From contig NC_088802.1 of NCBI RefSeq assembly GCF_011386835.1, forward strand, positions 1,488,001 to 1,552,000: 64,000 nucleotides of DNA, in the 5' to 3' direction. The position numbers and the translations under genes were made by a program. The notes beneath the pieces are model-generated. The model did not search any database and was not told where the DNA came from. It saw only the letters and a program-made list of their open reading frames with translations. Below, one piece after another: positions 15,876 through 63,804 of this stretch. How positions within the stretch are numbered: position 1 is the stretch's first letter; each line of letters starts with the position of its first letter. The DNA is from Chrysemys picta bellii. Taxonomy: Eukaryota.

Positions 15876-15877
15876 AG

Positions 15878-23379
<7,502 letters not shown>

Positions 23380-24419: not shown

Positions 24420-26340
24420 TGGCCTCTGAAACCTATTTATTCTGAATTCCTTTTTGGGGTACAGTGGGGTCGGGGGGGGGGGGTCGGTGTCTCGGGTCCG
24501 TCCGCTGCCCACGACTCTGGGAGTTGCCAGATGAACCGTCATTCGCCCCTCGCCAACCCCACTGTGAGCCTCAGGAGGGCCGTCCCGGTGCCCCCCGTTC
24601 TGCTGGGACCTGGGGAGTGCGCCCCGGGGGGACAGAGTCCAACGGAGCCACCACTGGCCGAGGGGTTACATCTTTCTTGTCACCTATGGGGGGAAGAAAG
24701 AGGGGTACCTAGAGAGTTACTTGGGGTGTTAACAGGCACCCCCAAAATCCACTGTACTCCCAACATTGTCCCTGACAGTCTCCCAGTGGGATGTGCTCTC
24801 CCAATATATTGGGGGGGGGGCAGAAATCACTGATATATTGTGGGGTGTGCTAGGAGGTAGCACCTTGAAGCAGTGAAAGTTTTGGGGTGCACACAAAGAG
24901 CAGAACAGAGGAGTTTCAGGATGGTAGAACGGAGGTGATTTCCAGATATGGCAGGATATGAGGGACCTAGAGAGATTGCATTTTGCAAAGATGTGGAGTG
25001 ATTTTGGGGTGCAGAATTGGGAACACCGGAGATTAGGAGGCATTTTGTGGTGCAGGGAGACCAAAAAATCAGGGTACACAAGAGTGGGAAACCCTAACAA
25101 AGATCTGGATGGTGTAGGTCAGTTTGAGGGTTTGGAACAAGAGACTCCCCCAAATGATGGAAAGATTTGGGGATACAGAATAGATGCAGAACAGGTCAGT
25201 GGGCCCCAGAAAGATGTTAAAGGATTCTGGGGTACAGCTTCAGTTTTGAGGTGTAGAAGACGGAGAATCTCTACAAAGAGATCTGAAATTTGGGGGGAGG
25301 GGGGTAGAATCAGGAAGACACTTTATGAATATAGAGAATTTTGGAGGTTCGGAAAAGGGGGAATCTCTACCCATAGATAGGAGACTTTGGGGGTGGACAA
25401 AGGGGCCCTCACAAAATCAGGGAGGGATTGGGAACAAAATGGGTGAAAACTGGGGTGCAGGACAAGGTGAAGGCCAAATTAGGGGTACAGAACAGCTACA
25501 TATTGGAAGGGTAAATCAGGGAGTTTTGGGGGTGAGCTGTAGGGAGGTGGGGGAGTTTGGGGTCCAGCCAGTGGGGTGCACTCTCTTGTTTAGGTAGGGG
25601 TGGCTACATAAAGGGGTGCCCTGTGAGAGTATTATGGGTGAACTGGGGTGCTGGAAAAGGGGGTTCAGCATTAGAATGGGGGAGTTTGGGGTGCTGATAA
25701 TGGTGTGATCCAGTGAGGGAATTCAGGACCATTTGGGGGCATGAACTGGGGACCCCAAGAGTTGGGGTGTAGCGACAAGAGGGCACAGGAGTTAGGGGGT
25801 ACAGGAGTAGAGGGGCAGCTTCCTGGGGACGGAGGAGGGGATTTTAGGGTGCAGAACTAGGGATCCTTCGAGGGCAGACTAGGAAGCTTTGGGGTGCAGT
25901 TCACAGGGGTGGGGCACCCCACAGGGACTCAGATTGCTTCCAAGGGGGCTGCGTGGGGAGAGGGGCCCACCAGCAAAGAAAGGGTGTGCACTTACCTAGG
26001 TCCTTGCGCCGGCTGGGGGGCAGGGGCGCCCCAGGGTCGTCCCTACGCAGAGCCGAGGCGATTTGCCGCCCCACATAGCGGCAAGCTGCTGGGAGAGAGA
26101 CGGGGGCTCATTGAGGGCGATCTGGGGGCACAGTGCACCCCCTTTTCCATCCCCCCGGATCCCTACTCGCCAGCACCCCCCAGACCCTGCCTAGTGCCCC
26201 CCGGGCCCCCCTTCCCACCATCCCCCCTCTGTCCCGGGGCCCCCGAGCCCCCCACTCACCCCCAATGACCAGTCAGACCATGCCGGATCCAGCTGGGCGC
26301 TGACGTAAGCGGCATGGAAATAAAGCGGGAGGGGGAGGGG
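24420..26340 (-). ncRNA. Candidate unannotated 3-exon transcript (lncRNA or micro-ORF)
   Basis: Exon A ends at 26260 (GTGAGT); exon B 26088-25996 (pyrimidine tract-AG, GTAAGT donor); exon C starts at 24683 (CTTTCTTCCCCCCATAG) with AATAAA at 24441-24436. No expression evidence is available. Confidence 0.4.
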
Positions 26341-29859: not shown

Positions 29860-30985
29860 CGCCCCTCACTCCCGACCCGCAGCCCCGGCCAGCCCAGCCC
29901 TGCCGGTGCCCCTCACTCCCGACCCGCAGCCCCTGCCAGCCCCGCCCTGCCGGTGCCCCTCACTCCCGACCCGCAGCCCCCTGCCAGCCCAGCCCTGCCG
30001 GTGCCCCTCACTCCCCACCCGCAGCCCCAGTCAGCCCTGCCGGTGCCCCTCACTCCTGACCCGCAGCCCCTGCCAGCCCAGCCCTGGGCCCCCCCCAGCC
30101 CTGCCGATGCCCCTCACTCCCGACCCGCAGCCCCTGCCAGCCCAGCCCTGCCCCCCCCCAGCTCTGCCAATGCCCCTCACTCCCGACCCGCAGCCCCTGC
30201 CAGCCCAGCCCTGGGCCCCCCCAGCCCTGCCGGTGCCCCTCACTCCCGACCCGCAGCCCCTGCCAGCCCAGCCCTGCCCCCCCAGCCCTGCCGGTGCCCC
30301 TCACTCCCGACCTGCAGCCCCTGCCAGCCCAGCCCTGCCCCCCCAGCCCTGCCGGTGCCCCTCACTCCCGACCCGCAGCCCCTGCCAGCCCAGCCCTGGG
30401 CCCCCCCCAGCCCTGCCGATGCCCCTCACTCCCGACCCGCAGCCCCTGCCAGCCCAGCCCTGCCCCCCCCCAGCTCTGCCGGTGCCCCTCACTCCCGACC
30501 CGCAGCCCCTGCCAGCCCAGCCCTGCCGGTGCCCCTCACTCCCGACCCGCAGCCCCTGCCAGCCCAGCCCTGCCGGTGCCCCTCACTCCCAACCCGCAGC
30601 CTCTGTCAGCCCAGATTTGCCCCCCAGTTCTGCCCATGCCCCTCACTCCTGACCCACAGCCCTCTGCTAGCCCAGCCCTGCCAGTGCCCCTCACTCCCGA
30701 CCCGCAGCCCCGGTCAGCCCTGCCCCCCCCAGCCCTGCCGATGCCCCTCACTCCCGACCCGCAGCCCCTGCCAGCCCAGCCCTGCCCCCCAGCTCTGCCG
30801 GTGCCCCTCACTCCCGACCCACAGCCCCCGCCAGCCCGGCCCTGCCCCCCCCCAGCTCTGCCGGTGCCCCTCACTCCCGACCCGCAGCCCCTGCTAGCCC
30901 AGCCCTGCCCCCCCCAGCTCTGCCGGTGCCCCTCACTCCCGACCTGCAGCCCTTGCCAGCCCGGCCCTGCCCCCCCCAGCTCTGC
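29860..30985 (+). repeat. Minisatellite GCCGGTGCCCCTCACTCCCGACCCGCAGCCCCTGCCAGCCCAGCCCTG
   Basis: About 20 units between the FKBPL and PRRT1 3' ends. Confidence 0.95.
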
Positions 30986-33601: not shown

Positions 33602-41700
<8,099 letters not shown>

Positions 41701-41914
41701 CTTGCGGGGGTTGGCTCCGCTCGTCTCTTCTCCTGCGAAGCAGCCGGGCTGGGGGGGGGGGAACTAGCGGCAGCGGCTCCAGCGTCACCGCCTCCCCCCC
41801 CCCCGAAACGAGCTGGTACCCGGATCCCCCCCCCCCCCCAGCGCCTGAGCTGCCGAGACAGGGACCCGCCAGCCAGACAGACGGGGCAGGAACAATCGCC
41901 CCACAGCCCCCGAC

Positions 41915-43080
41915 CCCCCGCTCCGCCGGTGCCCCTCACTCCCGACTCTCAGCCCCCTCCTCCGCCGGTGCCCCTCACTCCCGACCCGCAGCCCCCCCGC
42001 TCCGCCGGTGCCCCTCACTCCCGACCCGCAGCCCCCTCCTCCGCCGGCGCCCCTCACTCCCGACCCGCAGCCCCCCCCCCTCCGCCCGCGCCCCTCACTC
42101 CCGACCCGCAGCCCCCCCCCCTCCGCCGGCGCCCCTCACTCCCGACCCGCAGCCCCCCCGCTCCGCCGGCGCCCCTCACTCCCGACCCGCAGCCCCCAGC
42201 CCGGCCGGTGCCCCTCACTCCCAACCCGCCGCCCCCCTGCTCCGCCGGCGCCCCTCACTCCCGACCCGCAGCCCCCTCCTCTGCCGGTGCCCCTCACTCC
42301 CGACCCACAGCCCCCTCCTCTGCCGGTGCCCCTCACTCCCGACCCGCAGCCCCCCCCACTCCGCCGGCGCCCCTCACTCCCGACCCGCAGCCCCCTCCTC
42401 TGCCGGTGCCCCTCACTCCCGACCCCCAGCTCCCCCAGCCCGGCCGGTGCCCCTCACTCCCGACCCCCAGCTCCCCCAGCCCGGCCGGTGCCCCTCACTC
42501 CCGACCCGCAGTCCCCCCGCTCTGCCGGTGCCCCTCACTCCCGACCCACAGCCCCCAGCCCAGCCGGTGCCCCTCAGTCCCGACCCGCAGCCCCCTCCTC
42601 CGCCGGTGCCCCTCACTCCCGACCCGCAGCCCCCCCGCTCCGCCGGAGCCCCTCACTCCCGACCCGCAGCCCCCAGCCCGGCCGGCGCCCCTCACTCCCG
42701 ACCCGCAGCCCCCCCCGCTCCGCCGGTGCCCCTCACTCCCGACTCGCAGCCGCCCCGCTCCGCCGGCGCCCCTCACTCCCGACCCGCAGCCCCCCCGCTC
42801 CGCCGGCGCCCCTCACTCCCGACCCGCAGCCCCCTCCTCTGCCGGTGCCCCTCACTCCCAACCCGCCGCCCCCCTGCTCCGCCGGCGCCCCTCACTCCCG
42901 ACCCGCAGCCCCCTCCTCCGCCGGCGCCCCTCACTCCCGACCCGCAGCCCCCTCCTCCACCGGCGCCCCTCACTCCCGACCCGCAGCCCCCCCGCTCCGC
43001 TGGTGCCCCTCACTCCCGACCCGCAGCCCCCCCGCTCCGCTGGTGCCCCTCACTCCTGACCCGCAGCCCCCTCCTCCTGT
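41915..43080 (+). repeat. Minisatellite CCGCCGG(C/T)GCCCCTCACTCCCGACCCGCAGCCCC upstream of PRRT1
   Basis: About 28 units of ~40 bp. Confidence 0.95.
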
Positions 43081-43753
43081 CGCCGGAGTGAGGGGAGGCC
43101 TCGTACAATGAGGAGGCGGGGCCACAGAGGGGGAGGAGCCTGCACTGGAGGGGCGGGGCGGGCCGATTGGGGCAGGAAGGGATCCTAGGGGAGGGGGGCT
43201 CTGCCCTCCCTTCCATTCATTCCCCCCATGGGCCGTGACCCCGCCCAGCCCCCCATTGCCCCATAGCGGCACTATGGGCTCGGGGCTGCAGGGAGCCGGG
43301 GGCAGTAGGGTCATGGGGGTCACTAGGAGGCACCGCGCCCCCAGGATGGGGGAGATCAGGGGGGTCCCTGGGGGCACAGCACCCCTGGGAAGAGGGGGCT
43401 CGGGGGGTCACTAGGAGGCACCACACCCCCAGGAAGGGGAGGATTAGTAGGCACCGTGCAGCCAGGACGGGAGGGTCCAGGGGCTGCCACACCCCTGGGA
43501 AGGGGGAGATCAGGGGGGGTCACTGGTAGGCACTTTGCCCGCAAAAAAGGGGGTCATTGGGGGTCCCAAACGACCACAAAGTGGGGGGCACCACAACCCC
43601 AGGAAGGGGAGGGTGGGGGGGTTACTGAAGCACCACCCCCGGGAAGTGGGTGGGTTGGGGGTCACTAGGGGCATCACACCTCAGGGACGGGGGCATTCAG
43701 GGGGATCCCATACTCAGAGCCGACACCACATAGCTACAAATCGCACCAGGATT

Positions 43754-43759
43754 TTTATT
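43754..43759 (-). terminator. Poly(A) signal of the CRAT-like gene
   Basis: AATAAA on the minus strand about 310 nt after the stop codon. Confidence 0.6.
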
Positions 43760-44065
43760 CATTTTCCGTCCATCAGAAAATAAGTTAGATTTGTCTCCCA
43801 ATTACCTGTGTGAATGGGGGGGGGGGGCTGCCCCTGCGCAGAGGGGATTGTGGGTAAGGAGGGGAGGGGGCACAGAAGGGGATTGTGGGTAGGATGGCAG
43901 GGGACGCATAGAGGATTCTGGGTAGGGAGCGAGGGGGCGCAGAAGGGGATGTTGGGTGGGAGTGTCAGAGGGGTTCTGGGCAGGGGGATTGTGGGTAAGG
44001 GGGCGAGGGGTGCTGCAGAGGGGCATTGTGGGTAGATGGAGTGTGTGGTGGCAGGCGGGGGGCCG

Positions 44066-44314
44066 TCAGGGCTGCCCCTCCACATCCCCACCCCCCTCCC
44101 CGTCAGTGCTCCCCGGGTTCTCTCCCAGCAGGCGGGCGAGCTGGTCCAGGACCTGCTGCAGGGTGCGGGCCAGGCGCTGGGCGTGGGTCTCACGGCAGCA
44201 GTTGAAGGCTGTGATGGCAAAGTTGACGTGGGCGTCCAGCGGGTTGTAGCAGACCCCGTAGCCGTCCGGCACCTGCGGCCCGTAGATCATCAGGCAGTCG
44301 GAGCGCGAAGCCAC
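44066..44314 (-). CDS. Last coding exon of a carnitine O-acetyltransferase (CRAT)-like choline/carnitine acyltransferase family gene
   Basis: AG acceptor at 44315-6, then VASRSDCLMIYGPQVPDGYGVCYNPLDAHVNFAITAFNCCRETHAQRLARTL. This matches the recalled CRAT C-terminus VPAKTDCVMFFGPVVPDGYGVCYNPMEAHINFSLSAYNSCAETNAARLAHYL. Confidence 0.85.
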   Translation of the reverse strand: MASRSDCLMIYGPQVPDGYGVCYNPLDAHVNFAITAFNCCRETHAQRLARTLQQVLDQLARLLGENPGSTDGEGGGDVEGQP

Positions 44315-44609
44315 CTGGCAGGGTGTGGGGAGAGCGGGGTGAGGGGGGCGGACAAGTCCCCTCCCCCTGCCTGCACCCCAACGTCCACCCAACCTGAACC
44401 CCCCACCGCTGATGACCTCCACTGAGGAGGCAGGATAAGAACCCACTACTGCGAAGAGAGCCTGCGAAGAGAGCTCTCCCCAACACCCCTGGGCAGGGAG
44501 CAGGAACGGGTGTTAGTTGGGGGGCAGAGGCCCATATCTGCCTAGTGAGCAGCCATCAGTGGATGGCAACGGTACTGAGGGTAGCTGGTGCGGGGGACGG
44601 TGTAGCTGG

Positions 44610-47600
44610 GGGGTCCATACCTGCCTGGTAAGCAGCAGGTAGCATGTGGTGATGGTATAGGGGCGCCGTGGGGCGGGTGAGGGTGAGTTGGGGGGTGCCG
44701 TGGGGCAGTACCTGGCCGGTCAGCAGCCGGCAGTGCGTGGCGATGGCGTAGGGGCGCCGTGGGGCGGGTGAGGGTTAGTTGGGGGGCGCCGTGGGGCAGT
44801 ACCTGGCCGGTCAGCAGCCGGCAGTGCGTGGCGATGGCGTAGGGGCGCCGTGGGGCGGGTGAGGGTTAGTTGGGGGGACGCCGTGGGGCGCCGTGGGGCA
44901 GTACCTGGCCGGTCAGCAGCCAGCAGTGCGTGGCGATGGCGTAGGGGCGCCGTGGGGCGGGTGAGGGTTAGTTGGGGGGGCTCCGTGGGGCGGGTGAGGG
45001 TGAGTTGGGGGGCGCCGTGGGGCGCCGTGGGGCAGTACCTGGCCGGTCAGCAGCCGGCAGTGCGTGGCGATGGCGTAGGGGCGCCGTGGGGCGGGTGAGG
45101 GTTAGTTGGGGGGGCTCCGTGGGGCGGGTGAGGGTGAGTTGGGGGGCGCCGTGGGGCGCCGTGGGGCAGTACCTGGCCGGTCAGCAGCCAGCAGTGCGTG
45201 GCGATGGCGTAGGGGCGCCGTGGGGCGGGTGAGGGTTAGTTGGGGGGCTCCATGGGGCGGGTGAGGGTTAGTTGGGGGCGCCGTGGGGGGCCGTGGGGCA
45301 GTATCTGGCCGGTCAGCAGCTGGCAGTGCGTGGCGATGGCGTAGGAGCGCCGTGGGCGGGTGAGGGTTAGTTGGGGAGCGCCGTGGGGCAGTACCTGGCC
45401 GGTCAGCAGCCGGCAGTGCGTGGTGATGGCGTAGGGGCGCCGTGGGGCGGGTGAGGGTTAGTTGGGGGGCGCCGTGGGGCAGTACCTGGCCGGTCAGCAG
45501 CTGGCAGTGAGTGGCGATGGCGTAGGGGCGCCGTGGGGCGGGTGAGGGTTAGTTGGGGGGACGCCGTGGGGCGCCGTGGGGCAGTACCTGGCCGGTCAGC
45601 AGCCAGCAGTGCGTGGCGATGGCGTAGGGGCGCCGTGGGGCGGGTGAGGGTTAGTTGGGGGGGCTCCGTGGGGCGGGTGAGGGTGAGTTGGGGGGCGCCG
45701 TGGGGCGCCGTGGGGCAGTACCTGGCCAGTCAGCAGCCAGCAGTGCGTGGCGATGGCGTAGGGGCGCCGTGGGGCGGGTGAGGGTTAGTTGGGGGGCTCC
45801 GTGGGGCGGGTGAGGGTTAGTTGGGGGGCGCCGTGGGGCAGTACCTGGCCGGTCAGCAGCCGGCAGTGCGTGGCGATGGCGTAGGGGCGCCGTGGGGCAG
45901 GTGAGGGTTAGTTGGGGGCGCCGTGGGCACCGTGGGCAGTACCTGGCCGGTCAGCAGCCGGCAGTGCGTGGCGATGGCGTAGGGGCTCCGTGGGGCGGGT
46001 GAGGGTTAGTTGGGGGGCGCCGTGGGGCAGTACCTGGCCGGTCAGCAGCCGGCAGTGCGTGGCGATGGCGTAGGGGCGCCGTGGGGCGGGTGAGTGTTAG
46101 TTGGGGGGCGCCGTGGGGCACCGTGGGGCAGTACCTGGCCGGTCAGCAGCCGGCAGTGCGTGGCGATGGCGTAGGGGCTCCGTGGGGCTGGTGAGGTTAG
46201 TTGGGGGGCGCCGTGGGGCAGTACCTGGCCGGTCAGCAGCCGGCAGTGCGTGGCGATGGCGTAGGGGCGCCGTGGGGCGGGTGAGGGTTAGTTGGGGGGC
46301 GCCGTGGGGCACCGTGGGGCAGTACCTGGCCGGTCAGCAGCCGGCAGTGCGTGGCGATGGCGTAGGGGCGCCGTGGGGCAGGTGAGGGTTAGTTGGGGGG
46401 CGCCGTGGGGCAGTACCTGGCCGGTGAGCAGCCGGCAGTGCGTGGTGATGGCGTAGGGGCTCCGTGGGGCGGGTGAGGGTTAGTTGGGGGGCGCCGTGGG
46501 GTAGTACCTGGCCGGTCAGCAGCCGGCAGTGCGTGGCGATGGCGTAGGGGCGCTGTGGGGCGGGTGAGGGTTAGTTGGGGGGCGCCGTGGGGCAGTACCT
46601 GGCCGGTGAGCAGCCGGCAGTGCGTGGTGATGGCGTAGGGGCTCCGTGGGGCGGGTGAGGGTTAGTTGGGGGGCGCCGTGGGGCAGTACCTGGCCGGTCA
46701 GCAGCCGGCAGTGCGTGGCGATGGCGTAGGGGCGCCGTGGGGCGGGTGAGGGTTAGTTGGGGGGCGCCGTGGGCAGTACCTGGCCGGTCAGCAGCCAGCA
46801 GTGCGTGGCGATGGCGTAGGGGCGCCGTGGGGCGGGTGAGGGTTAGTTGGGGGCGCCGTGGGGCAGTACCTGGCCGGTCAGCAGCCGGCAGTGCGTGGCG
46901 ATGGCGCAGGGGCGCCGTGGGGCGGGTGAGGGTTAGTTGGGGGGGCTCCGTGGGGTGGGTGAGGGTTAGTTGGGGGGCGCCGTGGGGCACCGTGGGGCAG
47001 TACCTGGCCGGTCAGCAGCCGGCAGTGCGTGGCGATGGTGTAGGGGCGCCGTGGGGCGGGTGAGGGTTAGTTGGGGGGCGCCGTGGGGCACCGTGGGGCA
47101 GTACCTGGCCGGTCAGCAGCCGGCAGTGCGTGGCGATGGCGTAGGGGCGCCGTGGGGCGGGTGAGGGTTAGTTGGGGGGCGCCGTGGGGCGGGTGAGGGT
47201 TAGTTGGGGGGCGCCGTGGGGCAGTACCTGGCCGGTCAGCAGCCGGCAGTGCGTGGCGATGGCGTAGGGGCGCCGTGGGGCGGGTGAGGGTTAGTTGGGG
47301 GGCGCCGTGGGGCAGTACCTGGCCGGTCAGCAGCCGGCAGTGCGTGGCGATGGCGTAGGGGCGCCGTGGGGCGGGTGAGGGTTAGTTGGGGGGCGCCGTG
47401 GGGCACCGTGGGGCAGTACCTGGCCGGTCAGCAGCCGGCAGTGCGTGGCGATGGTGTAGGGGCGCCGTGGGGCGGGTGAGGGTTAGTTGGGGGGCGCCGT
47501 GGGGCACCGTGGGGCAGTACCTGGCCGGTCAGCAGCCGGCAGTGCGTGGCGATGGCGTAGGGGCGCCGTGGGGCGGGTGAGGGTTAGTTGGGGGGCGCCG

Positions 47601-48528
47601 TGGGGCGGGTGAGGGTTAGTTGGGGGGCGCCGTGGGGCAGTACCTGGCCGGTCAGCAGCCGGCAGTGCGTGGCGATGGCGTAGGGGCGCCGTGGGGCGGG
47701 TGAGGGTTAGTTGGGGGGCGCCGTGGGGCAGTACCTGGCCGGTCAGCAGCCGGCAGTGCGTGGCGATGGCATAGGGGCGCCGTGGGGCGGGTGAGGGTTA
47801 GTTGGGGGGACGCCGTGGGGCGCCGTGGGGCAGTACCTGGCCGGTCAGCAGCCAGCAGTGCGTGGCGATGGCGTAGGGGCGCCGTGGGGCGGGTGAGGGT
47901 TAGTTGGGGGGGCTCCGTGGGGCGGGTGAGGGTGAGTTGGGGGGCGCCGTGGGGCGCCGTGGGGCAGTACCTGGCCAGTCAGCAGCCAGCAGTGCGTGGC
48001 GATGGCGTAGGGGCGCCGTGGGGCGGGTGAGGGTTAGTTGGGGGGCTCCGTGGGGCGGGTGAGGGTTAGTTGGGGGGCGCCGTGGGGCAGTACCTGGCCG
48101 GTCAGCAGCCGGCAGTGCGTGGCGATGGCGTAGGGGCGCCGTGGGGCAGGTGAGGGTTAGTTGGGGGGCGCCGTGGGGCACCGTGGGGCAGTACCTGGCC
48201 GGTCAGCAGCCGGCAGTGCGTGGCGATGGCGTAGGGGCTCCGTGGGGCGGGTGAGGGTTAGTTGGGGGGCGCCGTGGGGCAGTACCTGGCCGGTCAGCAG
48301 CCGGCAGTGCGTGGCGATGGCGTAGGGGCGCCGTGGGGCGGGTGAGTGTTAGTTGGGGGGCGCCGTGGGGCACCGTGGGGCAGTACCTGGCCGGTCAGCA
48401 GCCGGCAGTGCGTGGCGATGGCGTAGGGGCTCCGTGGGGCTGGTGAGGGTTAGTTGGGGGGCGCCGTGGGCAGTACCTGGCCGGTCAGCAGCCGGCAGTG
48501 CGTGGCGATGGCGTAGGGGCGCCGTGGG
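44610..48528 (-). repeat. About 37-unit tandem array of the CRAT-like penultimate exon 3' end (PYAIATHCRLLTGQ), its GT donor and an intron piece
   Basis: ~90-135 bp units, minus strand CCCTACGCCATCGCCACGCACTGCCGGCTGCTGACCGGCCAG|GTACTG...CAACTAACCCTCACCCGCCCCACGGCG. There is one diverged terminal copy at 44610-44665. The array runs into the gap. Confidence 0.92.
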
Positions 48529-49028
48529 NNNNNNNNNNNNNNNNNNNNNNNNNNNNNNNNNNNNNNNNNNNNNNNNNNNNNNNNNNNNNNNNNNNNNNNN
48601 NNNNNNNNNNNNNNNNNNNNNNNNNNNNNNNNNNNNNNNNNNNNNNNNNNNNNNNNNNNNNNNNNNNNNNNNNNNNNNNNNNNNNNNNNNNNNNNNNNNN
48701 NNNNNNNNNNNNNNNNNNNNNNNNNNNNNNNNNNNNNNNNNNNNNNNNNNNNNNNNNNNNNNNNNNNNNNNNNNNNNNNNNNNNNNNNNNNNNNNNNNNN
48801 NNNNNNNNNNNNNNNNNNNNNNNNNNNNNNNNNNNNNNNNNNNNNNNNNNNNNNNNNNNNNNNNNNNNNNNNNNNNNNNNNNNNNNNNNNNNNNNNNNNN
48901 NNNNNNNNNNNNNNNNNNNNNNNNNNNNNNNNNNNNNNNNNNNNNNNNNNNNNNNNNNNNNNNNNNNNNNNNNNNNNNNNNNNNNNNNNNNNNNNNNNNN
49001 NNNNNNNNNNNNNNNNNNNNNNNNNNNN
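48529..49028. other. Assembly gap (500 N)
   Basis: Run of exactly 500 N. Confidence 1.
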
Positions 49029-49968
49029 TATGAGTCGACAGTGTGACGTGGCGGTGAAAAAAGCCAATGCTGTCTTGGGATGCATTAGGCGAGGTATATC
49101 TAGTAGGGATAAGGAGGTCCTGCTTCCGTTGTACAAGGCGCTGGTGAGACCTCATTTGGAGTACTGTGTGCAGTTCTGGTCTCCCATGTTTAAAAAAGAT
49201 GAACTCAAACTGGAACGGGTGCAGAGAAGGGCCACTAGGATGATCAGAGGAATGGAAAACCTGTCGTATGAAAGGAGACTAGAGGAGCTTGGGTTGTTTA
49301 GTCTGACCAAGCGAAGGCTGAGGGGGGATATGATTGCTATCTTTAAATATATTAGAGGGATTAATACAAGGGAGGGAGATGAATTATTCCAGCTTAGTAC
49401 TAACGTGGATACGAGAACGAATGGATATAAACTGGCCGTGGGGAAGTTCAGGCTTGAAATTAGACGAAGGTTTCTGACCGTTAGAGGGGTGAAATATTGG
49501 AACGGCCTTCCGAGGGAAACGGTGGGGGCGAGGGACTTGTCTGGCTTTAAGATTAAGTTAGATAAGTTTATGGAGGGAATGGTTTAATGGTAAAACATAG
49601 TTGTCAAGGAAAACCAAGCAATGGTAGGTAAATAGCATAATGGCTAAAAGGGGTCAGGATGGAGACTCTTGCCTATATGCTCGGGGTCTTACTGATCGCC
49701 ATATTTGGGGTCGGGAAGGAATTTTCCTCCAGGGCAGATTGGCTGAGCCTCTGGAGGTTTTTCGCCTTCCTCCGCAGCATGGGGCAGGGATCTCTAGCAG
49801 GAGGGTCTCTGCCGATTGAGGTCACTAATAACAGGATTGGGGACTTCAGCAGCAGAGTCCAGGGAAGGGGCGGGGATGGTTTTATGGCCTGCAGCGTGCA
49901 GGGGGTCAGACCAGATGATCATAATGGTCCCTTCTGACCTTAAAGTCTATGAGTCTATGAGTCTATGA
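49029..49968 (+). mobile_element. Young CR1 LINE 3' end (ORF2 C-terminus, 3' UTR, (GTCTATGA)3 tail)
   Basis: Uninterrupted 185-aa frame (LYKALVRPHLEYCVQFWSP...ERVQRRATRMIRG...RRLRGD), CpG-rich, with the tail at 49945-49968. Confidence 0.95.
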
Positions 49969-50166
49969 GAACTCCTGGGTTCTCTCCCTGGCTCTGGGAG
50001 GGGAGTGGGATCTAGTGGTTAGAGCAGGGGGGCTGGGAGCCAGGACTCCTGGGTTCTCTCCCCGGCTCTGGGAGGGGAGTGGGGATGGGTGGGTCAGAGC
50101 AGGGGGGCTGGGAGCCTGAACGCCTGGGTCCTGTCCCTAGTAAGGGATGGGGGGTGTCCTACTCAC

Positions 50167-53100
50167 CCGTCCAGCCGGGGGGGCAGAGGCAGGAGTACGT
50201 CCCCACCCCGTCCTGGCAAGCCCCCCCGTTCCGGCAGTGGTGCTCCACGCAGTCGTCGGGGTTCACCTCACACAGCTGCCCCGTGTACCCTGGGGGGGGA
50301 CAGAGAGAGACGCCCCCGGGGGGGGGGGGTAATTCAGCCGCAGTCGCTCCCCTCCACAGCGGGCAGCCATGTTGGGAGCCACGGTTCCAGGGCGGAGGGG
50401 GCTGGGGAGGTTGGCTATCCTGGAGACTGGCCTCCGGTGGTGCCTGCTGACCCCCCCACACCGAGTCCCCCCCATTCCCAGTCACCCCCAGGAACGGGTC
50501 TGGTTCTAATTAGCCCCGTCCCATAACGGCCCCGTTGAACATAACAGCTGGTGGGAGGAACCAAGAACATGGCGGCCATATTGGATTGGTCTGTCTAGGG
50601 GAAGGGGCCTCTGGGCCGTTCTGAGTGTGATCTCTTCTCTCACTGACAGGGCCAGGCCAGAGAGAGTCAGTTCCCGCCAACACCCACCTGCCCCAGGGCC
50701 CAACTTCAGAGACTCGTTAGGAAGGTCTGGGAAGGAGCAGAGCTGGGAAACGCAGCCGCATCGTTAGGGAGACGGGAGCTGTGTGCTCAGGGCTTGGGGG
50801 GTCAGCAAAGACTTGTCTATTGCTAGGGCTTCGATTCAAAGACCAAACCAGGGATATTAACATTTAGGGAGACACTGGCGGGAAATAGTGTCATTGTCTC
50901 TAGGTCTCTTTGAAGGTTGTGGTGACCTGGATCTGAACTGTTTCATGGATAAATGACCCTGTGCTAATTGCCAGGATGTTTAAAAGAAGCAGAGTTAAGT
51001 CTATTGTTTTCTCAGGCCAAGCAGCTGCTGGAAATGTGTAAGAACCCTGGGACATGATCCTGCTTCATCTCAGATCTGCTTTGGGTTTCAAGAGGGGGAA
51101 ACCTTAAGCCACAAGGATTGAGATCCCCAGTCACTGACTGGAGCCACCCTGAATATGGACATGGGACTATAACCTCTGGACTATTTCTAAAAGGACTTTT
51201 GGCAACTACAAGCTCATCTCTGCTGTGTCTGAACCTCAAGAATTGAATTCAAGTCTGTCTGTATATTGATCTTTTAACCAACACTCTCTCCCTTTTCTTT
51301 TTTAATAAATTTTAGTTTAGTTAATAAGAATTGGCTATAACGTGTATTTTGGGTAAGATCTGAGTTATCATTGGACCTGGGTATGTAGCTGATCCTTTGG
51401 GGTTGGAAGAACCTTTTCTTGTATCTGATGAGATCAGATTCTCAGTAATCACCATCGTATCTGACGTGTGCGTCTGGACGGAGGCCGGACGCTGGGTACT
51501 TTAAGGGAACTGCGTTGTTTGGACGTCTGAGTAACCAGGGAGGTTCTATAGAAGCTGTTTTGGGCTGGTTGGTAAATCTCAGCCCTGGAGGATCCACCAG
51601 CGTTGGGGGTTTGTCTGCCCCGGTCTGTTTGCAGTTCACCCTGATTGAATGACCTCAGCACCGTCACAGCCTCGATGGGGCGGCCATATTGGATTGGTTC
51701 TGTCTAGTGGAAGGCATCTCAATGTGGCGGCCATATTGGATTGGCCCTGTCCGGGGGATGAGAAATCGATGGGGCGGCCCTACTGGGACAGTCCAGTCTA
51801 CAGGAACGGGCCAGGGCCTGGCAGCCATATTGGGCACCAGCGGACGATACGTCACCTCGGCGGCCATATTGAATGTCGGCCCCACGTGCAGCAAGGCGCC
51901 CCCGGCCCAGCCCCAGCCCCCGCCCCTGCCGCGGCGCAGCCCCCACCTGGCGGGCACAGGCAGCCGTGGAAGCCGCCGGGCAGGGGCCGGCAGGTCCCGC
52001 CGTGCAGACACAGCCCGGCGGAGCAGGGCCCGGCGCGGTGCTGGCACTGGGGGCCAGAGAAGCCGGGGGGGCAGAGGCAGCGGAAGGAGCCCAGGCTGTT
52101 GAGACAGGTGCCCCCGTTGGCGCAGGGCCCGGGGTCCCGGTAGCACTCGTTGACGTCATGCTGGCAGGTGTGGCCGTCGAAGCCGGGCAGGCACTGGCAC
52201 ACGATGTGCGGGTAGGTGAGCAGGCAGGTGCCCCCGTTGGCGCAGGGGTTGGTGGGGCAGAAATCCATCAGCTGGCAGTTCTTCCCTGGACGGGACCCCT
52301 CATCAGAGCCACGGAGAGAACCCAGGAGTCCTGGCTCCCGCCCCCCTCCCAGACCCGGGGAGAGAACCCAGGAGTCCTGGCTCCCAGCCCCCCACCCCCC
52401 TGCTCTAACCACCAGCCCCCACTCCCCTCCCAGAGCTGGGATAGAACCCATGCGTCCGGGCACCTACCTGTCCATCCTTCCATGCACAGGCAGCGGTACT
52501 GGGCGCTGGACAGGCGCTGGCAGGTGCCGCGTTTCTGGCAGGGCGAGGGGAAGCAGGGGTCGCCCACGGCCCCCTGGCACTCGTCCCCGGTGAACCCTGG
52601 GGGGCAGGAGCAGGTGTAGGTGGGGGGCACCGAGGGGTGGAAGAGCCGGGGGAAGCAGGTGCCCCCATTCCGGCAGCGCCCAGGGCGGCACGGGTCCTGG
52701 AACTGGCACGACTCCCCCACAAAGCTGGGGGGGCAGCTGGGGAGAGAGAACCCAGGAGTCCAGTGAGGGGAGAGGGAGTTAAGCCCCCCATTTTCCCTCC
52801 CCCCAAAACCCCCCAATCAGCTCCCTCCCCCTGGGTTCCCCTCAACTCACAGGCAGGAGCGGCTCCCATCGGGGTGTGCCAGGCAGGTGCCCCCGTTCGT
52901 GCAGGGATCCCGGGCGCAGGTCAGACCTGGGTGGGGGGTGGACAGACGGACGGCGGGGGTCAGAACACCCTCAGACATGGAGACCCCATCTCCCCAGCCC
53001 TCCACCCCTACCCCAGAGCCCCGGCTGTACCTCGCCCAGGGGTCCTTATCCCGGGATAAGTCCCCGGTACAGACGCCCTTATCCCGGGATAAAGCAGCCA

Positions 53101-56100
53101 ATCCCCCACAGGGACGGCTCCGCGCTGCCCCCCAGCCGGGGGATCTCCCAATGGGGACCGAACCAGCCGGCCCCACTATGGGCACAGAGAACCCAGGAGT
53201 CCTGCCAGGCACGGGGGCAGCTGCCCGGGGGGGGGGTCGAGCATTTCTGTTAATTGGTTTCCAGTTCTGGATGGGATGACATGATGGAATACTGGGTGTG
53301 ACGTAGCCCAGGGGAGCTTGACAATGCGACAGAAAATCCATCGTGTCAGAGGATACAGCGTTCAAACGTGTCGCCTCGGCTGGGTTCGGATTTCATACAC
53401 TGCACCCCCCGGGCCGAGAGCACGGAACGGAGCTGAGTTCACGGGATTATTTTAATATAATAGGACACGGAATACGACAACATGAAAATAACCTTAACGT
53501 TCATAAATCTATTATACGCACGACTGAAATATTAGAGAGCGATTCGAATGTAAATATATTTGATAAGATATTTAATATGAACCATATTTGAAATCTAATT
53601 GTATATGTAAAATATATTACAATATTATAAACAGCAAATAGTATCGTCAATATTTTAATCTTCAACTTAATAGATACTTATAATATGAACACAATAGATC
53701 TTCTATTGAATCTTGATAGCTTGATCTGACTAGATCACATGAAATGTCAAATAGATAATTAATTTTAAGACTAGATTATTATATTGACCATTTTAATATA
53801 TTATACTTATATAATAGCGATTCTATTTCATATTTATTAGAACATATATTAAGTATAATAGTATATATTCTTCAGTTTAGTGTGTGTATATATATATATA
53901 TATAAAAATGAAATATTCAAACAATAGTTCTCATATTAGCATATGCCATTCCGTATAAGAATGGCAGTAATGAATGAGCAGTCTCTGTAACACCACCCCC
54001 TAGCGTACCCCTGGGGTTCTGTTTACTAGGGCACCATTCACTAGCGTTGCACCGAATAGCTAGTCCAGCGCAATGTGACACTGGCTCGTTCACGTGGCCG
54101 CTAGCAGTGGTGGTCACTAGGCCGTGTAAACGGAAGCGGAGTGACGCCCCCTGAGCACGCGGACACGACGCGATTTTACCTGGGCGAAAGGAGCGGTTGG
54201 AAACAGCCAGACGGGCCTTTCCCGGCCGCCATGACCCTGCCCCCCCATCCCATCCCCAGCATCTGCATTTCGAGGTCTCTGCGTTTCTGTCCCAAAGCCG
54301 GGGGACAGGGGAGCTTGAGCCGTCACGGACCTGCAGGCCCATTAGCGCATCGAATCTGACCTGCTTTATGGCCCAGGCCTGAGAACGTCCCCCGCTGCCC
54401 TGCCCCACACAGACACACACGGCCCCCAATACATCGCCAGCTCCTTGGGCACAGGGCTGGCTGCGAGCAGGCGCGGGGGATTTCGCAGCCAGGAACTCGC
54501 CTGGGAAACAGGACTTGGTGCCATTTCTTCTCCTGAAGCCACCCAAGGACTGGCCACTGCTGGGCCTCCTCCACACACACACTGGCGAAAGGCCCCTTTA
54601 TCCTGGGACAAGGGCCCCACCCTCGGGACTGTCCCAGGAGAGCAGAACCGGGAGGCCACGTGAGGACAAGGCCAGTGTTTACCCGCTGGACACAATCCTT
54701 CGCCAGCGAGGTGCCACTCCCCCCCCAGACCGTGGTGCCAGCGTCCGTCACCCACCTGGGACCTCCTCAAAACCCAGAACCCCAGAAACGCCCAACGAGC
54801 TACCTCACAACCCTCCTGCTTTGCCACAGTGCCCGCAGGAGTCTCCTGCCGGTGCCCACTGCTGCCTTATGCCACCCGCCCAGGTGTTCCCAGGATCGCC
54901 CTCGTCTGAGCAGCCGGGAAAGGCACCCAGGTGCTCAGCGCATGGCCAGCGGCCCGGCTACAGGGGCGCAGGATCAGCCCGGACGTCCCGGGTTTCGGGC
55001 CCTCGAGGTGGCAGCTCTCAACATCCAACAGGGCGGGGGGGAGGGCAGGGGTACCATGACCCAGCATTAGACCCGCACTATAACAACTGAAGGAGGGCTG
55101 GCTCCCGCGACCCCCGGACTCACTCACTGGCCAAGTCACTCCTCAGTGCCTCGGTTTCCCCACCTGGACACTGGGGAGAATGAGCCCCACCTGTGTTATA
55201 AGGCGCTTGGAGCTGTACAAAGGAGGTTGGCTTCTTAATCCCTATTGCACAGATGGGGAAACAGAGGCATGGGGCGGGGAAAGGAACTTGGCCAAGGTCA
55301 CCCAGCACAGCAGTGGCAGAGCTGGGGATGGAACCCAGGAGTCCTGGCACACTGGCCACTCCACTCCCCCTTAATTAAACAGCACTAATTACGCCCCCCC
55401 CTCGCTGCCCCTGGCGCCCGTTACCTGGCATTTGTTCTCCCCTCCCTTGCCCGCCTTGGCACCGGCTCCCTCTGCCCATTAATTAACCTCGGTTCCTTCA
55501 TTGCCATTAATTCCCTCTTGCCTCCCCGTGCAATTAAATTCCCACCCGGCAATTCCTTCATTTGCATTCACTAATGGGCAATAATCGCAGGCGGGCGCAC
55601 GGGCATCCCCCGCCCTGTCGCTACTGGGCACCGATTTCCCCCCCCCCGGCTAATGAACGGCGCCAGTTATCCCCCCCTGCAGCCTTTGAATTCTTTATTA
55701 ATCCGCCCCCACTCTTCCCCAAGTCCCCCCGCATCCTGCCCCCCCAGTTCCTGTTGTTTTCCTGTTGTTCCCGATTCTGACTGTCCCGGCGGCATCCGGA
55801 CCTCGGGGAGGGGTTCCGGGGCGGGGGCGCTGAGCGTGGGAATCAGTCGGGGGGGGGGGAACGATCACCCCCACTACACATGCGGTGCCAGCCGGGTGTA
55901 CACACACACACACACACACGGTGCCCACCAGGTACACACAGACACACACACACGGTACCAGCCGGGGACACACACACACANNNNNNNNNNNNNNNNNNNN
56001 NNNNNNNNNNNNNNNNNNNNNNNNNNNNNNNNNNNNNNNNNNNNNNNNNNNNNNNNNNNNNNNNNNNNNNNNNNNNNNNNNNNNNNNNNNNNNNNNNNNN

Positions 56101-56820
56101 NNNNNNNNNNCACACACACATAGTGCCAGCCGGGTACACACAGACACACACACACAGTGCCAGCCGGGTGTACACACACACAGACACACACACGATGCCA
56201 GCCAGGTGTACACACACACACGGTGCCAGGCGGGTGTACACACACAGAGACACACACAGTGCCAGCCAGGTGTACACACACACAGACACACACACGATGC
56301 CAGCCAGGTGTACACACACACACGGTGCCAGCCGGGTGTACACACACAGAGACACACACAGTGCCAGCCAGGTGTACACACACACAGACACACACACGAT
56401 GCCAGCCAGGTGTACACACACACACACAGTGCCAGCCGGGTGTACACACACACAGACACACACACGATGCCAGCCAGGTGTACACACACACACGGTGCCA
56501 GCCGGGTGTACACACACAGACACACACACAGTGCCAGCCGGGTGTACACACACACAGACACACACACAGTGCCAGCCGGGTACACACAGACACAGAACCA
56601 CACACACGGTGCCAGCGGGGTACACACAGACACACACACACGGTGCCAGCCGCGTACACACACACACACACGGTGCCAGCCATGCCCACCCCCAGGCAGC
56701 AGGTGCCCAGATAAGTCAGGGGGCTCCCGGGGGGGCCTCCCACTCCCCAGCCTGCTCCCCCCCGGGTTCCCCCCCCGTACCTCGGGCCAGCGGCAGCAGC
56801 AGCAGCAGCAGCGGCCCCAT
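50167..56820 (-). CDS. NOTCH4: NOTCH4 copy 2, exons 1-5 only in this contig
   Basis: Exons 56820-56781, 52926-52851, 52736-52468, 52285-51947 and 50289-50167 have the same lengths and phases as copy 1. Intron 5 is interrupted by the CR1 and the gap. Confidence 0.88.
50689..51668 (+). mobile_element. Solo LTR-like element, copy 2
   Basis: Same position as 8501-9470 but with many more substitutions than the flanks. Confidence 0.6.
55884..56681. repeat. Compound (CA)n minisatellite, copy 2 (contains a 130-N gap at 55981-56110)
   Basis: Same unit as 14080-14746. Confidence 0.9.
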
Positions 56821-57811
56821 CGCTGAGCACGGAGCCCCCCAGCCCCGAGCCCGGCCCCCGCCCGGCCATTGTCCAGAGCTTCCTGACCCACAATGCAGGG
56901 AGGGACCCGGACCCGCCCCCTTCCTGCCCCCCAGCCCGGGAGCACCCTGCCCCCGCACGGACCCCTCCGCAGAGCGACCGGCGGGGCCAGAGCCGGCCGG
57001 GCTGCCCCCGTGCCCCAGGGCGGCGCTAGGGGTGGGGTCACCTGCCCAGACTGGGGCACTGCTGGGTTTGGGGGTCACCCCCCACAGGACATGAGCCAGG
57101 CGGTTCAGACACCTCTCGCTTTTATTTATAGATGTAAAAAAGCCCCCGGGGCAGGATCCGGCTGGGGGGATCCACAAAAGGGGGGGCCCTGTGGAGGGGA
57201 GCCCCCCCGGTCCCTCATCATGCCCCCCCAGTCTATAAATATCCACAGGGGAAGATAGTGCAGTACGGGGGTGGGGGGCAGGATCACCCCACGGGAATGG
57301 GGGCCAGGTCCTAGCACGGGGAGGGGTCACCCCAAGGAAGGGGGGGTCCAAGCGCTGTCCCCCAGCCCGCCTAGGCTGGGGGCGGGGCTAAGTGCTGCCT
57401 CATGTGGGAGGGGTGGTCACTAAGGGGCAGGGCCAGCCCTCACCCATGGGGAAGGGGCAGTGACTGAAGGGGCGGGGCTAGGCTCATCGGGGAGGAGGGG
57501 CTCTCTGAAAGGGGCGGGGTTAGTGCTGCTCAGGTGGGAGGAGCTATCCACAATGGGGCAGGATGAGCCTCAACATAAGCGGGGCTGTACCAATAGGGGC
57601 GGGGCTAGCCACATAGGGGCAGGGCTAGCCACATAGGGGCGGGGCCATTGCCAAAATGGCATATCAGGGGGCAAGGCGAGGCCCAGGTGGGCATGTCTGT
57701 CACCAAGGGGCATGTCTAGCCCCGGGCGGGCGTGGCTCTTGCCAAGGGGCGTGGCCAGCCCCGAGTGGGCGTGGCTATCTTGAGTGGGCGTGGCTTTGCC
57801 GAGGGGCGTAG

Positions 57812-63804
<5,993 letters not shown>

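What the first reader, a model, noticed from the sequence alone, without database searches (positions are those of the whole stretch)
44610..48528. Exon factory: about 37 tandem copies of an exon end plus donor, one of which has become a complete in-frame 45-nt exon
Seen: every unit carries the last 14 codons of the CRAT-like penultimate exon (PYAIATHCRLLTGQ) and the CAG|GTACTG donor, followed by a branch-point consensus CTAAC and a C-rich tract ending in CCCCACGG, one base short of an acceptor. In the unit at 46552-46508 a single CpG transition gives CCCCACAG. That creates branch point, tract, AG, 45 nt (RPYAIATHCRLLTGQ, phase 0-0) and GT, i.e. a symmetric cassette exon whose inclusion would duplicate the STS-equivalent substrate-binding segment. 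Because the enabling change is at a hypermutable CpG, any unit can be switched on. The outermost copy (44610-44665) is decayed (PYTITTCYLLLTRQ|GTATGG), so the array is old yet homogenised. Inference: a VNTR that generates new coding exons and dozens of competing donors.
Basis: partly seen in the sequence, partly recalled or inferred. Interest (0 to 1): 0.8.

Follow-up and report, generated by a model that had tools for sequence, protein, structure and literature searches.

The report
Minisatellite repeating an exon-intron junction
In a turtle carnitine-acetyltransferase-like gene, a large tandem repeat next to the last exon copies the final 14 codons and splice donor of the preceding exon in every unit, but RNA shows it is removed as ordinary intron, as in several human genes, so it is a good new example of a known kind.

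Summary
On the minus strand, 48518-44706 carries 37 near-identical units of 90-134 bp. Each unit has PYAIATHCRLLTGQ, CAG|GTACTG, CTAAC and a C-rich tract. Two decayed copies follow at 44665-44530. One unit (46552-46508) reads CCCCACAG and would give a 45-nt in-frame exon.

The "exon factory" reading is not supported. Contigs from four likely RNA runs (four studies) join exon 44314 to a single copy of the exon end, then continue into unique parent-exon sequence (QRLPGIFMDTA). The most upstream donor is used and the array is spliced out. The cassette is absent from the assembled isoform.

This kind is known: minisatellites whose first monomer spans an exon-intron boundary occur in human F7, IFI6, CBS, LMNB2 and PDGFA (PMC1557585).

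What is new here is the 42-nt exon share and the size. The array also has one origin across turtles (Eretmochelys 1 copy, Pangshura 7, Natator 20), and it evolves in concert with the coding exon.

Caveat: the array ends at a 500-N gap and the window holds no other exon of the gene. A ~42-kb segmental duplication, together with scan note s1-320970 (apparently a sister array next to the intact gene), suggests this copy may be a truncated duplicate.

The parts
44069..44314 (-). Last coding exon of the CRAT-like gene (82 codons, phase 0; stop codon at 44068-44066)
   Evidence: Translation. PDB carnitine acetyltransferase match, E = 4e-21. 94% and 86% identical to the Pangshura and Natator models. 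RNA contigs cover it and splice at 44314.
43746..44068 (-). 3' UTR; AATAAA starts at 43759 on the minus strand
   Evidence: RNA contigs of four runs end at 43746-43900. Poly(A) signal found.
44315..44529 (-). Unique 3' part of the intron, with a C-rich tract and the authentic acceptor (...CCCTGCCAG|GTG)
   Evidence: Sequence. GT..AG joints end here. 16 of 20 pyrimidines at positions -3 to -22.
44530..44665 (-). Two decayed units at the 3' edge of the array (PYTITTCYLLLTRQ|GTATGG, and a more degenerate copy with CAG|ATATGG)
   Evidence: Sequence reading.
44706..48528 (-). 37 homogenised units of 90-134 bp. Each has 42 nt of exon end, a donor, one or two copies of a 10-nt CCCCACGG(C/T)G motif and one or two copies of a 32-nt CTAAC plus C-tract module. 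Higher-order blocks are present (units 1-7 resemble 23-29). The array is truncated by the gap.
46506..46554 (-). The one unit with an acceptor-like CCCCACAG (AG at 46554-46553), a 45-nt in-frame exon-like segment (46552-46508) and donor GTACTA (GT at 46507-46506)
   Evidence: Not seen in the assembled RNA contigs.
48529..49028 (.). 500-N assembly gap directly abutting the array. The parent exon and all 5' exons are missing from the window beyond it.
   Evidence: tblastn with five CRAT-family proteins finds only the last exon and the array.

Best explanation
This is a GC-rich intronic minisatellite. It arose once, in an early cryptodiran turtle, by tandem duplication of a roughly 90-bp segment spanning the junction between the penultimate exon and the last intron of a CRAT-like (crat-b type) gene in the MHC class III region.

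Every unit therefore repeats the exon's last 42-43 nt and its 5' splice site. In the intact gene the first unit is the real exon-intron junction. The spliceosome uses that most upstream donor and removes the whole array with the intron.

Unequal exchange and gene conversion expand and contract the array: 1, 7, 20 and at least 37 copies in four species. The same processes keep the units, and the coding exon's end, homogeneous within each species.

The AG-bearing unit is a neutral CpG-decay variant, not a selected exon.

Shown here: the anatomy, the single origin, the concerted evolution, and the canonical junction in RNA contigs. Inferred: the neutrality, the duplication mechanism, and that pseudo-donors are silent for the reason found in human F7.
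For: - **Anatomy:** 37 units plus 2 decayed copies.
- **RNA:** contigs of 2.1-5.3 kb from X25, X27, X29 and X31 (four studies) join 44314 to a unit's CAG with GT..AG ends. They contain only 43 nt of exon end, with 0 mismatches. They then run into sequence that translates QRLPGIFMDTA, which is the unique part of the parent exon in Pangshura and Natator. They end near AATAAA at 43759.
- **Low array signal:** array-only contigs have a depth of about 3, against 30-233 for the mRNA.
- **Parent exon in relatives:** gapless Natator and Eretmochelys loci, and the Pangshura locus, show the parent exon followed directly by 20, 1 and 7 copies. All have the same junction, GC|CCCTACGCC.
- **Concerted evolution:** species-specific bases are shared by the parent exon and its own units, at positions 33, 39 and 47 of the 48-mer.
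- **Variant spectrum:** 17 of 24 variants in the exon parts are CpG transitions and several are non-synonymous. Divergence from consensus is 1.4% in the exon part and 2.7% in the spacer.
- **Local context:** 29% of the window is minisatellite, in 35 arrays, and GC skew over the array is +0.35 to +0.42.
- **Precedent:** F7, IFI6, CBS, LMNB2 and PDGFA (PMC1557585).
Against: - The RNA evidence consists of assembled contigs whose RNA status is only guessed by the tool. Contigs hide rare isoforms, and they fit any of the identical units.
- Only the four units nearest the last exon could be laid.
- All four runs differ from the window at 44090. Three also differ at 43859 and by 3 nt at 43816. The transcripts may therefore come from a sister copy, not from this DNA.
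- The parent exon is not in the window.
- The unit-20 acceptor is about as pyrimidine-rich (15 of 20) as the authentic acceptor (16 of 20). It has a CTAAC 19 nt upstream, so nothing in the sequence forbids its use.
Confidence: 0.8

Rival explanations
1. Exon factory. AG-bearing units are used as 45-nt cassette exons and the many donors compete. The array would then create new coding sequence, a duplicated RPYAIATHCRLLTGQ segment, at least at a low level or in some tissues or individuals.
For: Unit 20 has a branch-point-like CTAAC, a C-rich tract comparable to the real acceptor, a YAG, 45 nt in phase 0-0 and a GT. Pangshura independently has one such unit, at L001 11149, with CCCCACAG. In human IFI6 and CBS the two pseudo-donors nearest the exon are used (PMC1557585). 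An upstream acceptor is transcribed before the real one.
Against: Contigs of four runs show only the canonical junction. No turtle model (Pangshura, Natator, Eretmochelys) carries the insert. One unit in 37 is the neutral expectation: about 4.6% per CpG per direction gives about 1.7 units expected. The donor is weak, with 6 contiguous U1 pairs and -7.1 kcal/mol against -14.0 for the consensus. By homology to CrAT, a 15-aa insert would fall at the STS-equivalent strand in the core of the fold, so it is likely to be harmful. This array copy may lie outside the intact gene.
Confidence: 0.08
2. The array and last exon in this window are a truncated duplicate, not the working gene. On this reading, a ~42-kb tandem segmental duplication has one breakpoint in or near the array. 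It copied the block from the CRAT-like 3' end through PRRT1-like, FKBPL and ATF6B-like to the tenascin-like 5' part. The intact gene, with its own array of about 30 units and its own parent exon, lies about 22-29 kb beyond the window's end.
For: 7784-21513 matches 49968-63405 at 95-97% identity. The second copy carries a bZIP ORF (61711-62217) and EGF ORFs (52271-52816) on the minus strand. No CRAT exon lies in the 15 kb beyond the gap, whereas Natator has them all within 5.5 kb.

First-reader notes place a three-exon gene at 24420-26340 and again 2600 bases beyond the window. They also place an intron of about 30 GT...AG units at +22440 and CRAT exons at +25340 and +28479. All of these fit the same ~42.1-kb offset.

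RNA contigs differ from the window at 44090 in all four runs. In Pangshura a tenascin-like gene also lies directly upstream of a two-exon CRAT-like fragment.
Against: The region beyond the window was not seen here. The notes are unchecked titles. The junction is hidden in a gap, so a scaffolding error or two haplotypes laid in tandem would look the same. The differences from the RNA could be allelic.
Confidence: 0.5
3. Assembly artefact. The copy number, the internal block structure or the single T at 46554 would be errors of assembling a repeat, or the 42-kb duplicate would be a falsely duplicated haplotype.
For: The array ends at a gap. Units 1-7 and 23-29 have nearly the same order of lengths. 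Repeats of this kind are often mis-sized.
Against: The same array type is present in three other assemblies, two of them without gaps at the locus. The duplicated 7-unit blocks differ by substitutions and indels. 4-5% divergence between the 42-kb copies, and a non-homologous CR1-like end at 49029-49967, fit a real duplication better than alleles.
Confidence: 0.2
4. The array is kept because it does something in cis. It might be a row of U1 snRNP sites that protects or tunes the long intron, a platform for poly(C)-binding proteins, or a recombination or regulatory element.
For: Persistence since the split of Testudinoidea and Americhelydia. Every unit keeps CAG|GTAC, and the spacer is C-rich. 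The exon part is somewhat less variable than the spacer.
Against: Copy number ranges from 1 to at least 37 among species, so no dose is conserved. Homogenisation alone explains the similarity. Variants are mostly CpG decay. The surrounding region is full of unrelated minisatellites.
Confidence: 0.07

Closest known systems
Human LMNB2 intronic repeat (de Stanchina et al. 1997, as cited in PMC1557585)
   Same: [quoted passage not shown] Only the authentic donor is used.
   Different: The turtle array is larger (at least 37 units). It carries 42-43 nt of coding sequence per unit. It is shared, with concerted evolution, across turtle superfamilies, and it contains a unit with a complete acceptor.
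Human F7 intron 7 37-bp VNTR (Borensztajn et al. 2006, PMC1557585)
   Same: The first monomer spans the exon-intron boundary. Identical pseudo-donors follow, and only the most upstream one is used. The array is polymorphic in copy number.
   Different: F7 units hold only 4 nt of exon and there are 5-9 copies. No cassette exon can arise from one unit there. The mechanism (5'-to-3' scanning) was shown by 50 constructs for F7 and is only inferred here.
Human IFI6 (6-16) and CBS intron 13 minisatellites (Turri et al. 1995; Yang et al. 2000; as cited in PMC1557585)
   Same: Minisatellites at an exon/intron border that reiterate the donor, with 25 pseudo-sites in IFI6 and 15-20 repeats in CBS.
   Different: In those genes the two pseudo-donors nearest the exon are used constitutively. 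Here the assembled transcripts show only the authentic donor. Using the next donor would add 90-134 nt and mostly shift the frame.
Carnitine O-acetyltransferase (CrAT; PDB 1ndb, 1nm8) and the vertebrate 'carnitine O-acetyltransferase b / -like' paralogues
   Same: The last two exons align over 112 residues with mouse CrAT (E = 5e-39). The repeated peptide is the strand that carries the STS motif in CrAT.
   Different: STS reads LTG. In the Natator orthologue the catalytic YEH reads YEQ. The turtle gene lies between PPT2-like and PRRT1-like genes, not at the CRAT locus.

Membership tests
Minisatellite whose first monomer spans an exon-intron boundary (F7 / IFI6 / CBS / LMNB2 / PDGFA type) | Head-to-tail array of units of about 10-130 bp inside an intron | tested here: met
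   37 units of 90-134 bp, 97.5% mean pairwise identity in the 48-nt core.
Minisatellite whose first monomer spans an exon-intron boundary (F7 / IFI6 / CBS / LMNB2 / PDGFA type) | Each unit reiterates the exon's 3' end and the 5' splice site | tested here: met
   Each unit has 42-43 nt identical to the mRNA's exon end, then CAG|GTACTG. 35 of 37 units keep GTACTG; one has GTACTA and one ATACTG.
Minisatellite whose first monomer spans an exon-intron boundary (F7 / IFI6 / CBS / LMNB2 / PDGFA type) | The first monomer is the real exon-intron junction | tested here: inconclusive
   Met in the Natator, Eretmochelys and Pangshura loci and implied by the RNA loose ends. In this window the 5' end of the array is lost in the gap at 48529-49028.
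Minisatellite whose first monomer spans an exon-intron boundary (F7 / IFI6 / CBS / LMNB2 / PDGFA type) | Copy number varies | tested here: met
   Between species: 1, 7, 20 and at least 37 copies. Variation between individuals was not tested.
Minisatellite whose first monomer spans an exon-intron boundary (F7 / IFI6 / CBS / LMNB2 / PDGFA type) | The authentic (most upstream) donor is the one used | tested here: met
   Contigs of four runs hold one copy of the exon end between the unique parent-exon sequence and 44314. This is contig-level evidence only.
Alternatively spliced cassette exon | Acceptor, branch point, tract, in-frame body and donor are all present | tested here: met
   46554-46506: CTAAC 19 nt upstream, 15 of 20 pyrimidines, CAG, 45 nt, GT. 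No MaxEnt or SpliceAI score could be computed.
Alternatively spliced cassette exon | Inclusion in mature RNA | tested here: inconclusive
   Absent from the assembled contigs of four runs and from three turtle protein models.
Carnitine/choline acyltransferase (Pfam PF00755) | Sequence homology of the C-terminal domain | tested here: met
   PDB CrAT matches at E = 4e-21 (last exon) and 5e-39 (last two exons of the Pangshura model). PF00755 is recorded on the gene calls.
Carnitine/choline acyltransferase (Pfam PF00755) | Catalytic His (YEH) and STS motif | tested here: not met
   STS aligns to LTG. The Natator orthologue reads YEQ at the catalytic position. The His exon of this genome is not in the window.

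The most novel reading that the evidence does not exclude
Because the last 14 codons and the donor of a coding exon are themselves the first unit of a recombining minisatellite, the array could act as a reservoir that rewrites the coding sequence. Unequal exchange can swap any unit's variant (A>T, R>W, R>Q, Y>C are all present) into the exon. Recurrent CpG transitions, seen independently in this turtle and in Pangshura, switch units into in-frame 45-nt cassettes that are included at a low level. This would have helped remodel the active-site strand (STS to LTG) of a CRAT paralogue that has lost its catalytic histidine.
Probability: 0.08. Interest if true: 0.6.

Novelty: new member of a known kind. 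Interest (0 to 1): 0.3.

Why it matters
Natural arrays of identical 5' splice sites are rare test beds for how the spliceosome picks one donor among many. The human examples have 5-25 pseudo-sites and little or no coding sequence per unit.

This turtle array offers dozens of identical donors. It has a long exon share and naturally occurring units with a complete acceptor, in two species. Copy number ranges from 1 to at least 37 across species. That makes it a ready-made comparative series for minigene tests of donor scanning, exon definition and exonisation.

It also shows concerted evolution between a minisatellite and a coding exon end. For annotation, it warns that gene predictors and assemblers will break at this locus, as seen in the gap, the truncated models and the possible segmental duplication.

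Tried and rejected
- **tblastn of five CRAT-family proteins against the window.** This found no exon other than the last one and the array. I therefore dropped the idea that the parent exon lies just beyond the gap inside the window.
- **Searching for protein models with a duplicated YAIATHCRLLTGQ.** A phmmer scan of 1.8 billion representatives and two word-index searches returned only Pangshura, Natator and Eretmochelys models without the insert. Full-length turtle models were out of reach because of the length filter.
- **Selection on the exon part.** Divergence is 1.4% in the exon part and 2.7% in the spacer. The difference is too small, and too confounded by indels and homogenisation, to claim selection.
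- **Splice-site scores.** MaxEntScan and SpliceAI are not available. U1 duplex energy was used as a crude stand-in.
- **Scan notes on the duplication.** Searching for ATF6B or PRRT1 notes gave nothing usable beyond titles. A request for places beyond 64000 is not possible.
- **Array as a transposable element or a coding repeat.** Rejected. The units are anchored to the exon junction in four species, and the mRNA contains one copy only.
Full report
**1. What is there**

The gene reads on the minus strand. Its last coding exon is 44314-44069 (82 codons, phase 0, then TGA). It matches the C-terminus of carnitine acetyltransferase (PDB 1nm8, E = 4e-21; choline acetyltransferase at about 5e-9).

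Upstream of it in the direction of transcription lies 215 bp of unique intron ending in a C-rich tract and CAG. Next come two decayed repeat copies (44665-44610, reading PYTITTCYLLLTRQ|GTATGG, and about 44575-44530). After these are 37 well-kept units from 44753 up to 48518.

Each unit has 42 nt that translate PYAIATHCRLLTGQ, then CAG|GTACTG, then a spacer. The spacer is built from one or two copies of a 10-nt CCCCACGG(C/T)G motif and one or two copies of a 32-nt module holding CTAAC and a C-rich tract ending in CCCCACGGCGC. Unit lengths are 90/91 (15 units), 101/102 (10), 123 (4), 132/134 (6) and 98 (1).

Mean pairwise difference of the 48-nt core is 2.5%. Multi-unit blocks recur. Units 1-7 and 23-29 have the same order of lengths, and the 134-102-91 pattern occurs three times. 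This is the signature of unequal exchange.

The array runs into a 500-N gap at 48529, so 37 is a minimum.

**2. The special unit**

One spacer ends in CCCCACAGCGC instead of CCCCACGGCGC. On the plus strand this is the T at 46554. That gives AG at 46554-46553, 45 nt in phase 0-0 (46552-46508, RPYAIATHCRLLTGQ) and GT at 46507-46506, within a GTACTA donor.

The acceptor context has CTAAC 19 nt upstream and 15 of 20 pyrimidines. This is as good as the authentic acceptor of the last exon, which has 16 of 20.

Other AGs in the array are poor acceptors or out of frame: GGAG|CC 13 times, CACCAG|CC twice, TGCCAG|CTG twice, and the donors' own CAG.

**3. What the gene is and where the parent exon is**

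A full scan of 1.8 billion representative proteins with the last exon found two close relatives. They are annotated as carnitine O-acetyltransferase-like [Pangshura tecta] and an unnamed product of Natator depressus. A third, from Eretmochelys imbricata, came from a later search.

Their loci were fetched and give the following picture:

| Species | Assembly at the locus | Parent exon position | Copies after the parent exon | Last exon start |
|---|---|---|---|---|
| Natator | gapless | ends at 11792 | 20, with the same start (GC\|CCCTACGCC) | 14716 |
| Pangshura | 200-N gap at 10058-10257, upstream of the parent exon | ends at 10593 | 7 | 11539 |
| Eretmochelys | gapless contig | exon end copied in the units at 9450-9491 | 1 | 10029 |

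- In Natator the whole gene lies within 6325-14943. The parent exon reads GQGIDRHLLGLKLAAIGDGQRLPGIFMDTAYAIATHCRLLTGQ.
- In Pangshura the last of the 7 copies (11149) also has CCCCACAG.
- In Eretmochelys the intron is about 540 bp.

The unit boundary is the same in Testudinoidea and Chelonioidea. The array therefore arose once, before these lineages split. From published turtle time trees, as I recall them, that is on the order of 100 million years ago.

In the window itself, tblastn with five family members finds no exon other than the last one and the array copies.

**4. Concerted evolution**

Bases that differ between species are shared by each species' parent exon and its own units:

- Position 33 of the 48-mer is G in 35 of 37 window units. 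It is also G in the window species' mRNA, where the 43 nt fit with no mismatch. It is C in the parent exon and units of Pangshura and Natator.
- Positions 39 and 47 are G in the Natator parent exon and in most of its units.

Units 19 and 21 of the window keep what looks like the older C at position 33.

The coding exon's end is thus part of the homogenising array.

Within the window, 17 of 24 departures from consensus in the exon parts are CpG transitions. Several change the amino acid: A>T, R>W, R>Q, Y>C. The copies are therefore not held by protein-level selection.

About 4.6% of CpGs per direction carry a transition. That predicts about 1.7 units with the acceptor-creating G>A, and one is seen.

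**5. How it is spliced**

Many small runs that the tool guesses to be RNA hold the last exon.

In four runs from four studies, contigs of 2166, 5350, 2191 and 2100 nt cover the 3' UTR and last exon. They jump from 44314 to the CAG of a unit, skipping 397 or 724 nt with GT..AG ends. They fit 43 nt of exon end without mismatch.

They then leave the window with the plus-strand letters CCGTGTCCATGAAGATCCCGGGCAGCCGCT. The reverse complement of these letters encodes QRLPGIFMDTA, which is the unique part of the parent exon in the relatives.

The mRNA therefore holds one copy of the repeated segment, flanked by the parent exon body and the last exon. The most upstream donor is used and the whole array is removed.

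About 1560 nt lie upstream of the junction in the X25 contig. This is enough for a protein of about 616 residues. The contigs end 13-40 nt from an AATAAA at 43759.

Array-only contigs are present at a depth of about 3, against 30-233 for the mRNA contigs. This fits pre-mRNA or traces of DNA.

Its limits are these: the evidence is contigs rather than reads, the RNA status is a guess by the tool, rare isoforms would be lost, and unit 20 itself was not covered.

**6. Known kind**

Borensztajn et al. [quoted passage not shown]

| Human gene | Unit and copy number | Donor use |
|---|---|---|
| IFI6 (6-16) | 25 pseudo-sites | authentic donor plus the two nearest pseudo-sites |
| CBS intron 13 | 15-20 repeats | authentic donor plus two pseudo-sites |
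| LMNB2 | 10-15 repeats of 100 bp | authentic donor only |
| PDGFA intron 4 | 16-18 repeats of 81 bp | authentic donor only |
| F7 intron 7 | 5-9 repeats of 37 bp | most upstream donor only |

For F7 they show, with 50 constructs, that pseudo-donors are functional but silent because the most upstream site is chosen.

The turtle array is a new and larger member of this kind. The human LMNB2 repeat is the closest match.

The donor here is weak. It has six contiguous pairs to U1, with -7.1 kcal/mol against -14.0 for the consensus. Its position next to the defined exon, rather than its strength, plausibly decides its use. That point is inferred, not tested.

**7. Is this copy in the working gene?**

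Beyond the gap the window holds a CR1-like reverse-transcriptase ORF (49030-49584). From 49968 to 63405 there is a 95-97% copy of 7784-21513. This copy carries EGF (52271-52816) and bZIP (61711-62217) ORFs on the minus strand. These look like a tenascin-like 5' part and an ATF6B-like gene.

Nothing there resembles the 5.5 kb that holds the other CRAT-like exons in Natator.

First-reader notes from neighbouring windows, available only as unchecked titles, place the following:

- a three-exon gene at 24420-26340 and again 2600 bases past the window's end;
- an intron of about 30 back-to-back GT...AG units 22440 bases past the end (2901 letters);
- CRAT-paralogue exons starting exactly where that intron stops.

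All of these fit one offset of about 42.1 kb.

The simplest reading is a ~42-kb tandem duplication with one end in or beside the array. The intact gene, with its own array of about 30 units and its own last exon, would lie beyond the window. The array studied here would sit in a 3' fragment downstream of a truncated tenascin-like copy.

Three further points bear on this:

- All four RNA runs differ from the window at 44090, and three of them at two more places.
- Pangshura also has a tenascin-like gene directly upstream of a two-exon CRAT-like fragment.
- Two haplotypes laid in tandem, or a scaffolding error, cannot be excluded. However, 4-5% divergence and the non-homologous CR1 end argue for a real duplication.

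I put this reading at about even odds. If it is true, the AG-bearing unit is not in the working gene's intron at all.

**8. Verdict**

The structural part of the interpretation (a VNTR of exon end plus donor, old and homogenised) is supported. The functional part (an exon factory with competing donors) is not.

The region is saturated with minisatellites: 35 arrays covering 29% of the window. The array has the strand asymmetry typical of them, with GC skew of +0.35 to +0.42. The array is best seen as a neutral by-product that happens to include a splice junction.

It is a new member of a known kind. It is of moderate interest as a natural series for studying 5' splice-site choice and exonisation.

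Noticed in passing
window 7784-21513 and 49968-63405: Segmental duplication of at least 13.6 kb at 95-97% identity, offset about 42 kb. It carries bZIP (ATF6B-like) and EGF (tenascin-like) ORFs on the minus strand. First-reader notes suggest it extends to the CRAT-like 3' end. It recalls the modular duplications of the human MHC class III region.
   Followed up: partly
window 49030-49584 (+): A 185-aa ORF (...LEYCVQFWSP...) that looks to me like the C-terminal part of a CR1-type LINE reverse transcriptase, with no Pfam hit at E<=0.01. It lies between the gap and the start of the duplicated block and is not homologous to the other copy's flank.
   Followed up: no
L002 9157-9258 (Natator depressus): The catalytic-histidine motif of carnitine acyltransferases (YEH) reads YEQ, and the STS motif reads LTG. 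The paralogue may be a pseudoenzyme, yet it is well expressed in the window's species (contig depth 30-233).
   Followed up: partly
window, whole: 35 minisatellite arrays (period at least 10) cover 29% of the 64 kb. Examples are 41914-43077 (39/79-bp unit), 39779-41604 and 29861-30985. GC content is 55-75% throughout.
   Followed up: partly
window 44090, 43859, 43816, 44144: RNA contigs differ from the window at 44090 (A>G, synonymous) in all four runs. Three runs also differ at 43859 (G>A) and by a 3-nt deletion at 43816. These may be allelic or paralogous differences.
   Followed up: no
P0151 (Acipenser sinensis) and P0003 (organism not looked up): Protein models of CRAT-family genes in other animals contain two to five tandem copies of the segment encoded by the last one or two exons. 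Either the 3' end of this gene family duplicates in tandem repeatedly, or gene models run through such duplications.
   Followed up: no
L001 1-9253 and 10058-10257 (Pangshura tecta): A tenascin-like gene (EGF_TEN, fn3, Fibrinogen_C) ends 800 bp before a 200-N gap and the penultimate CRAT-like exon. No 5' CRAT-like exons lie in the 10 kb upstream, unlike Natator.
   Followed up: partly
window 49968-50137, 7520-7999, 10100-10557, 52296-52464: Tandemly repeated 75-bp unit (CTCCTGGGTTCTCTCCCCGGCTCTGGGAGGGGAGTGG...) of SINE-like sequence. It is also found upstream of the gene in Pangshura and Natator, and it marks the edge of the duplicated block.
   Followed up: no
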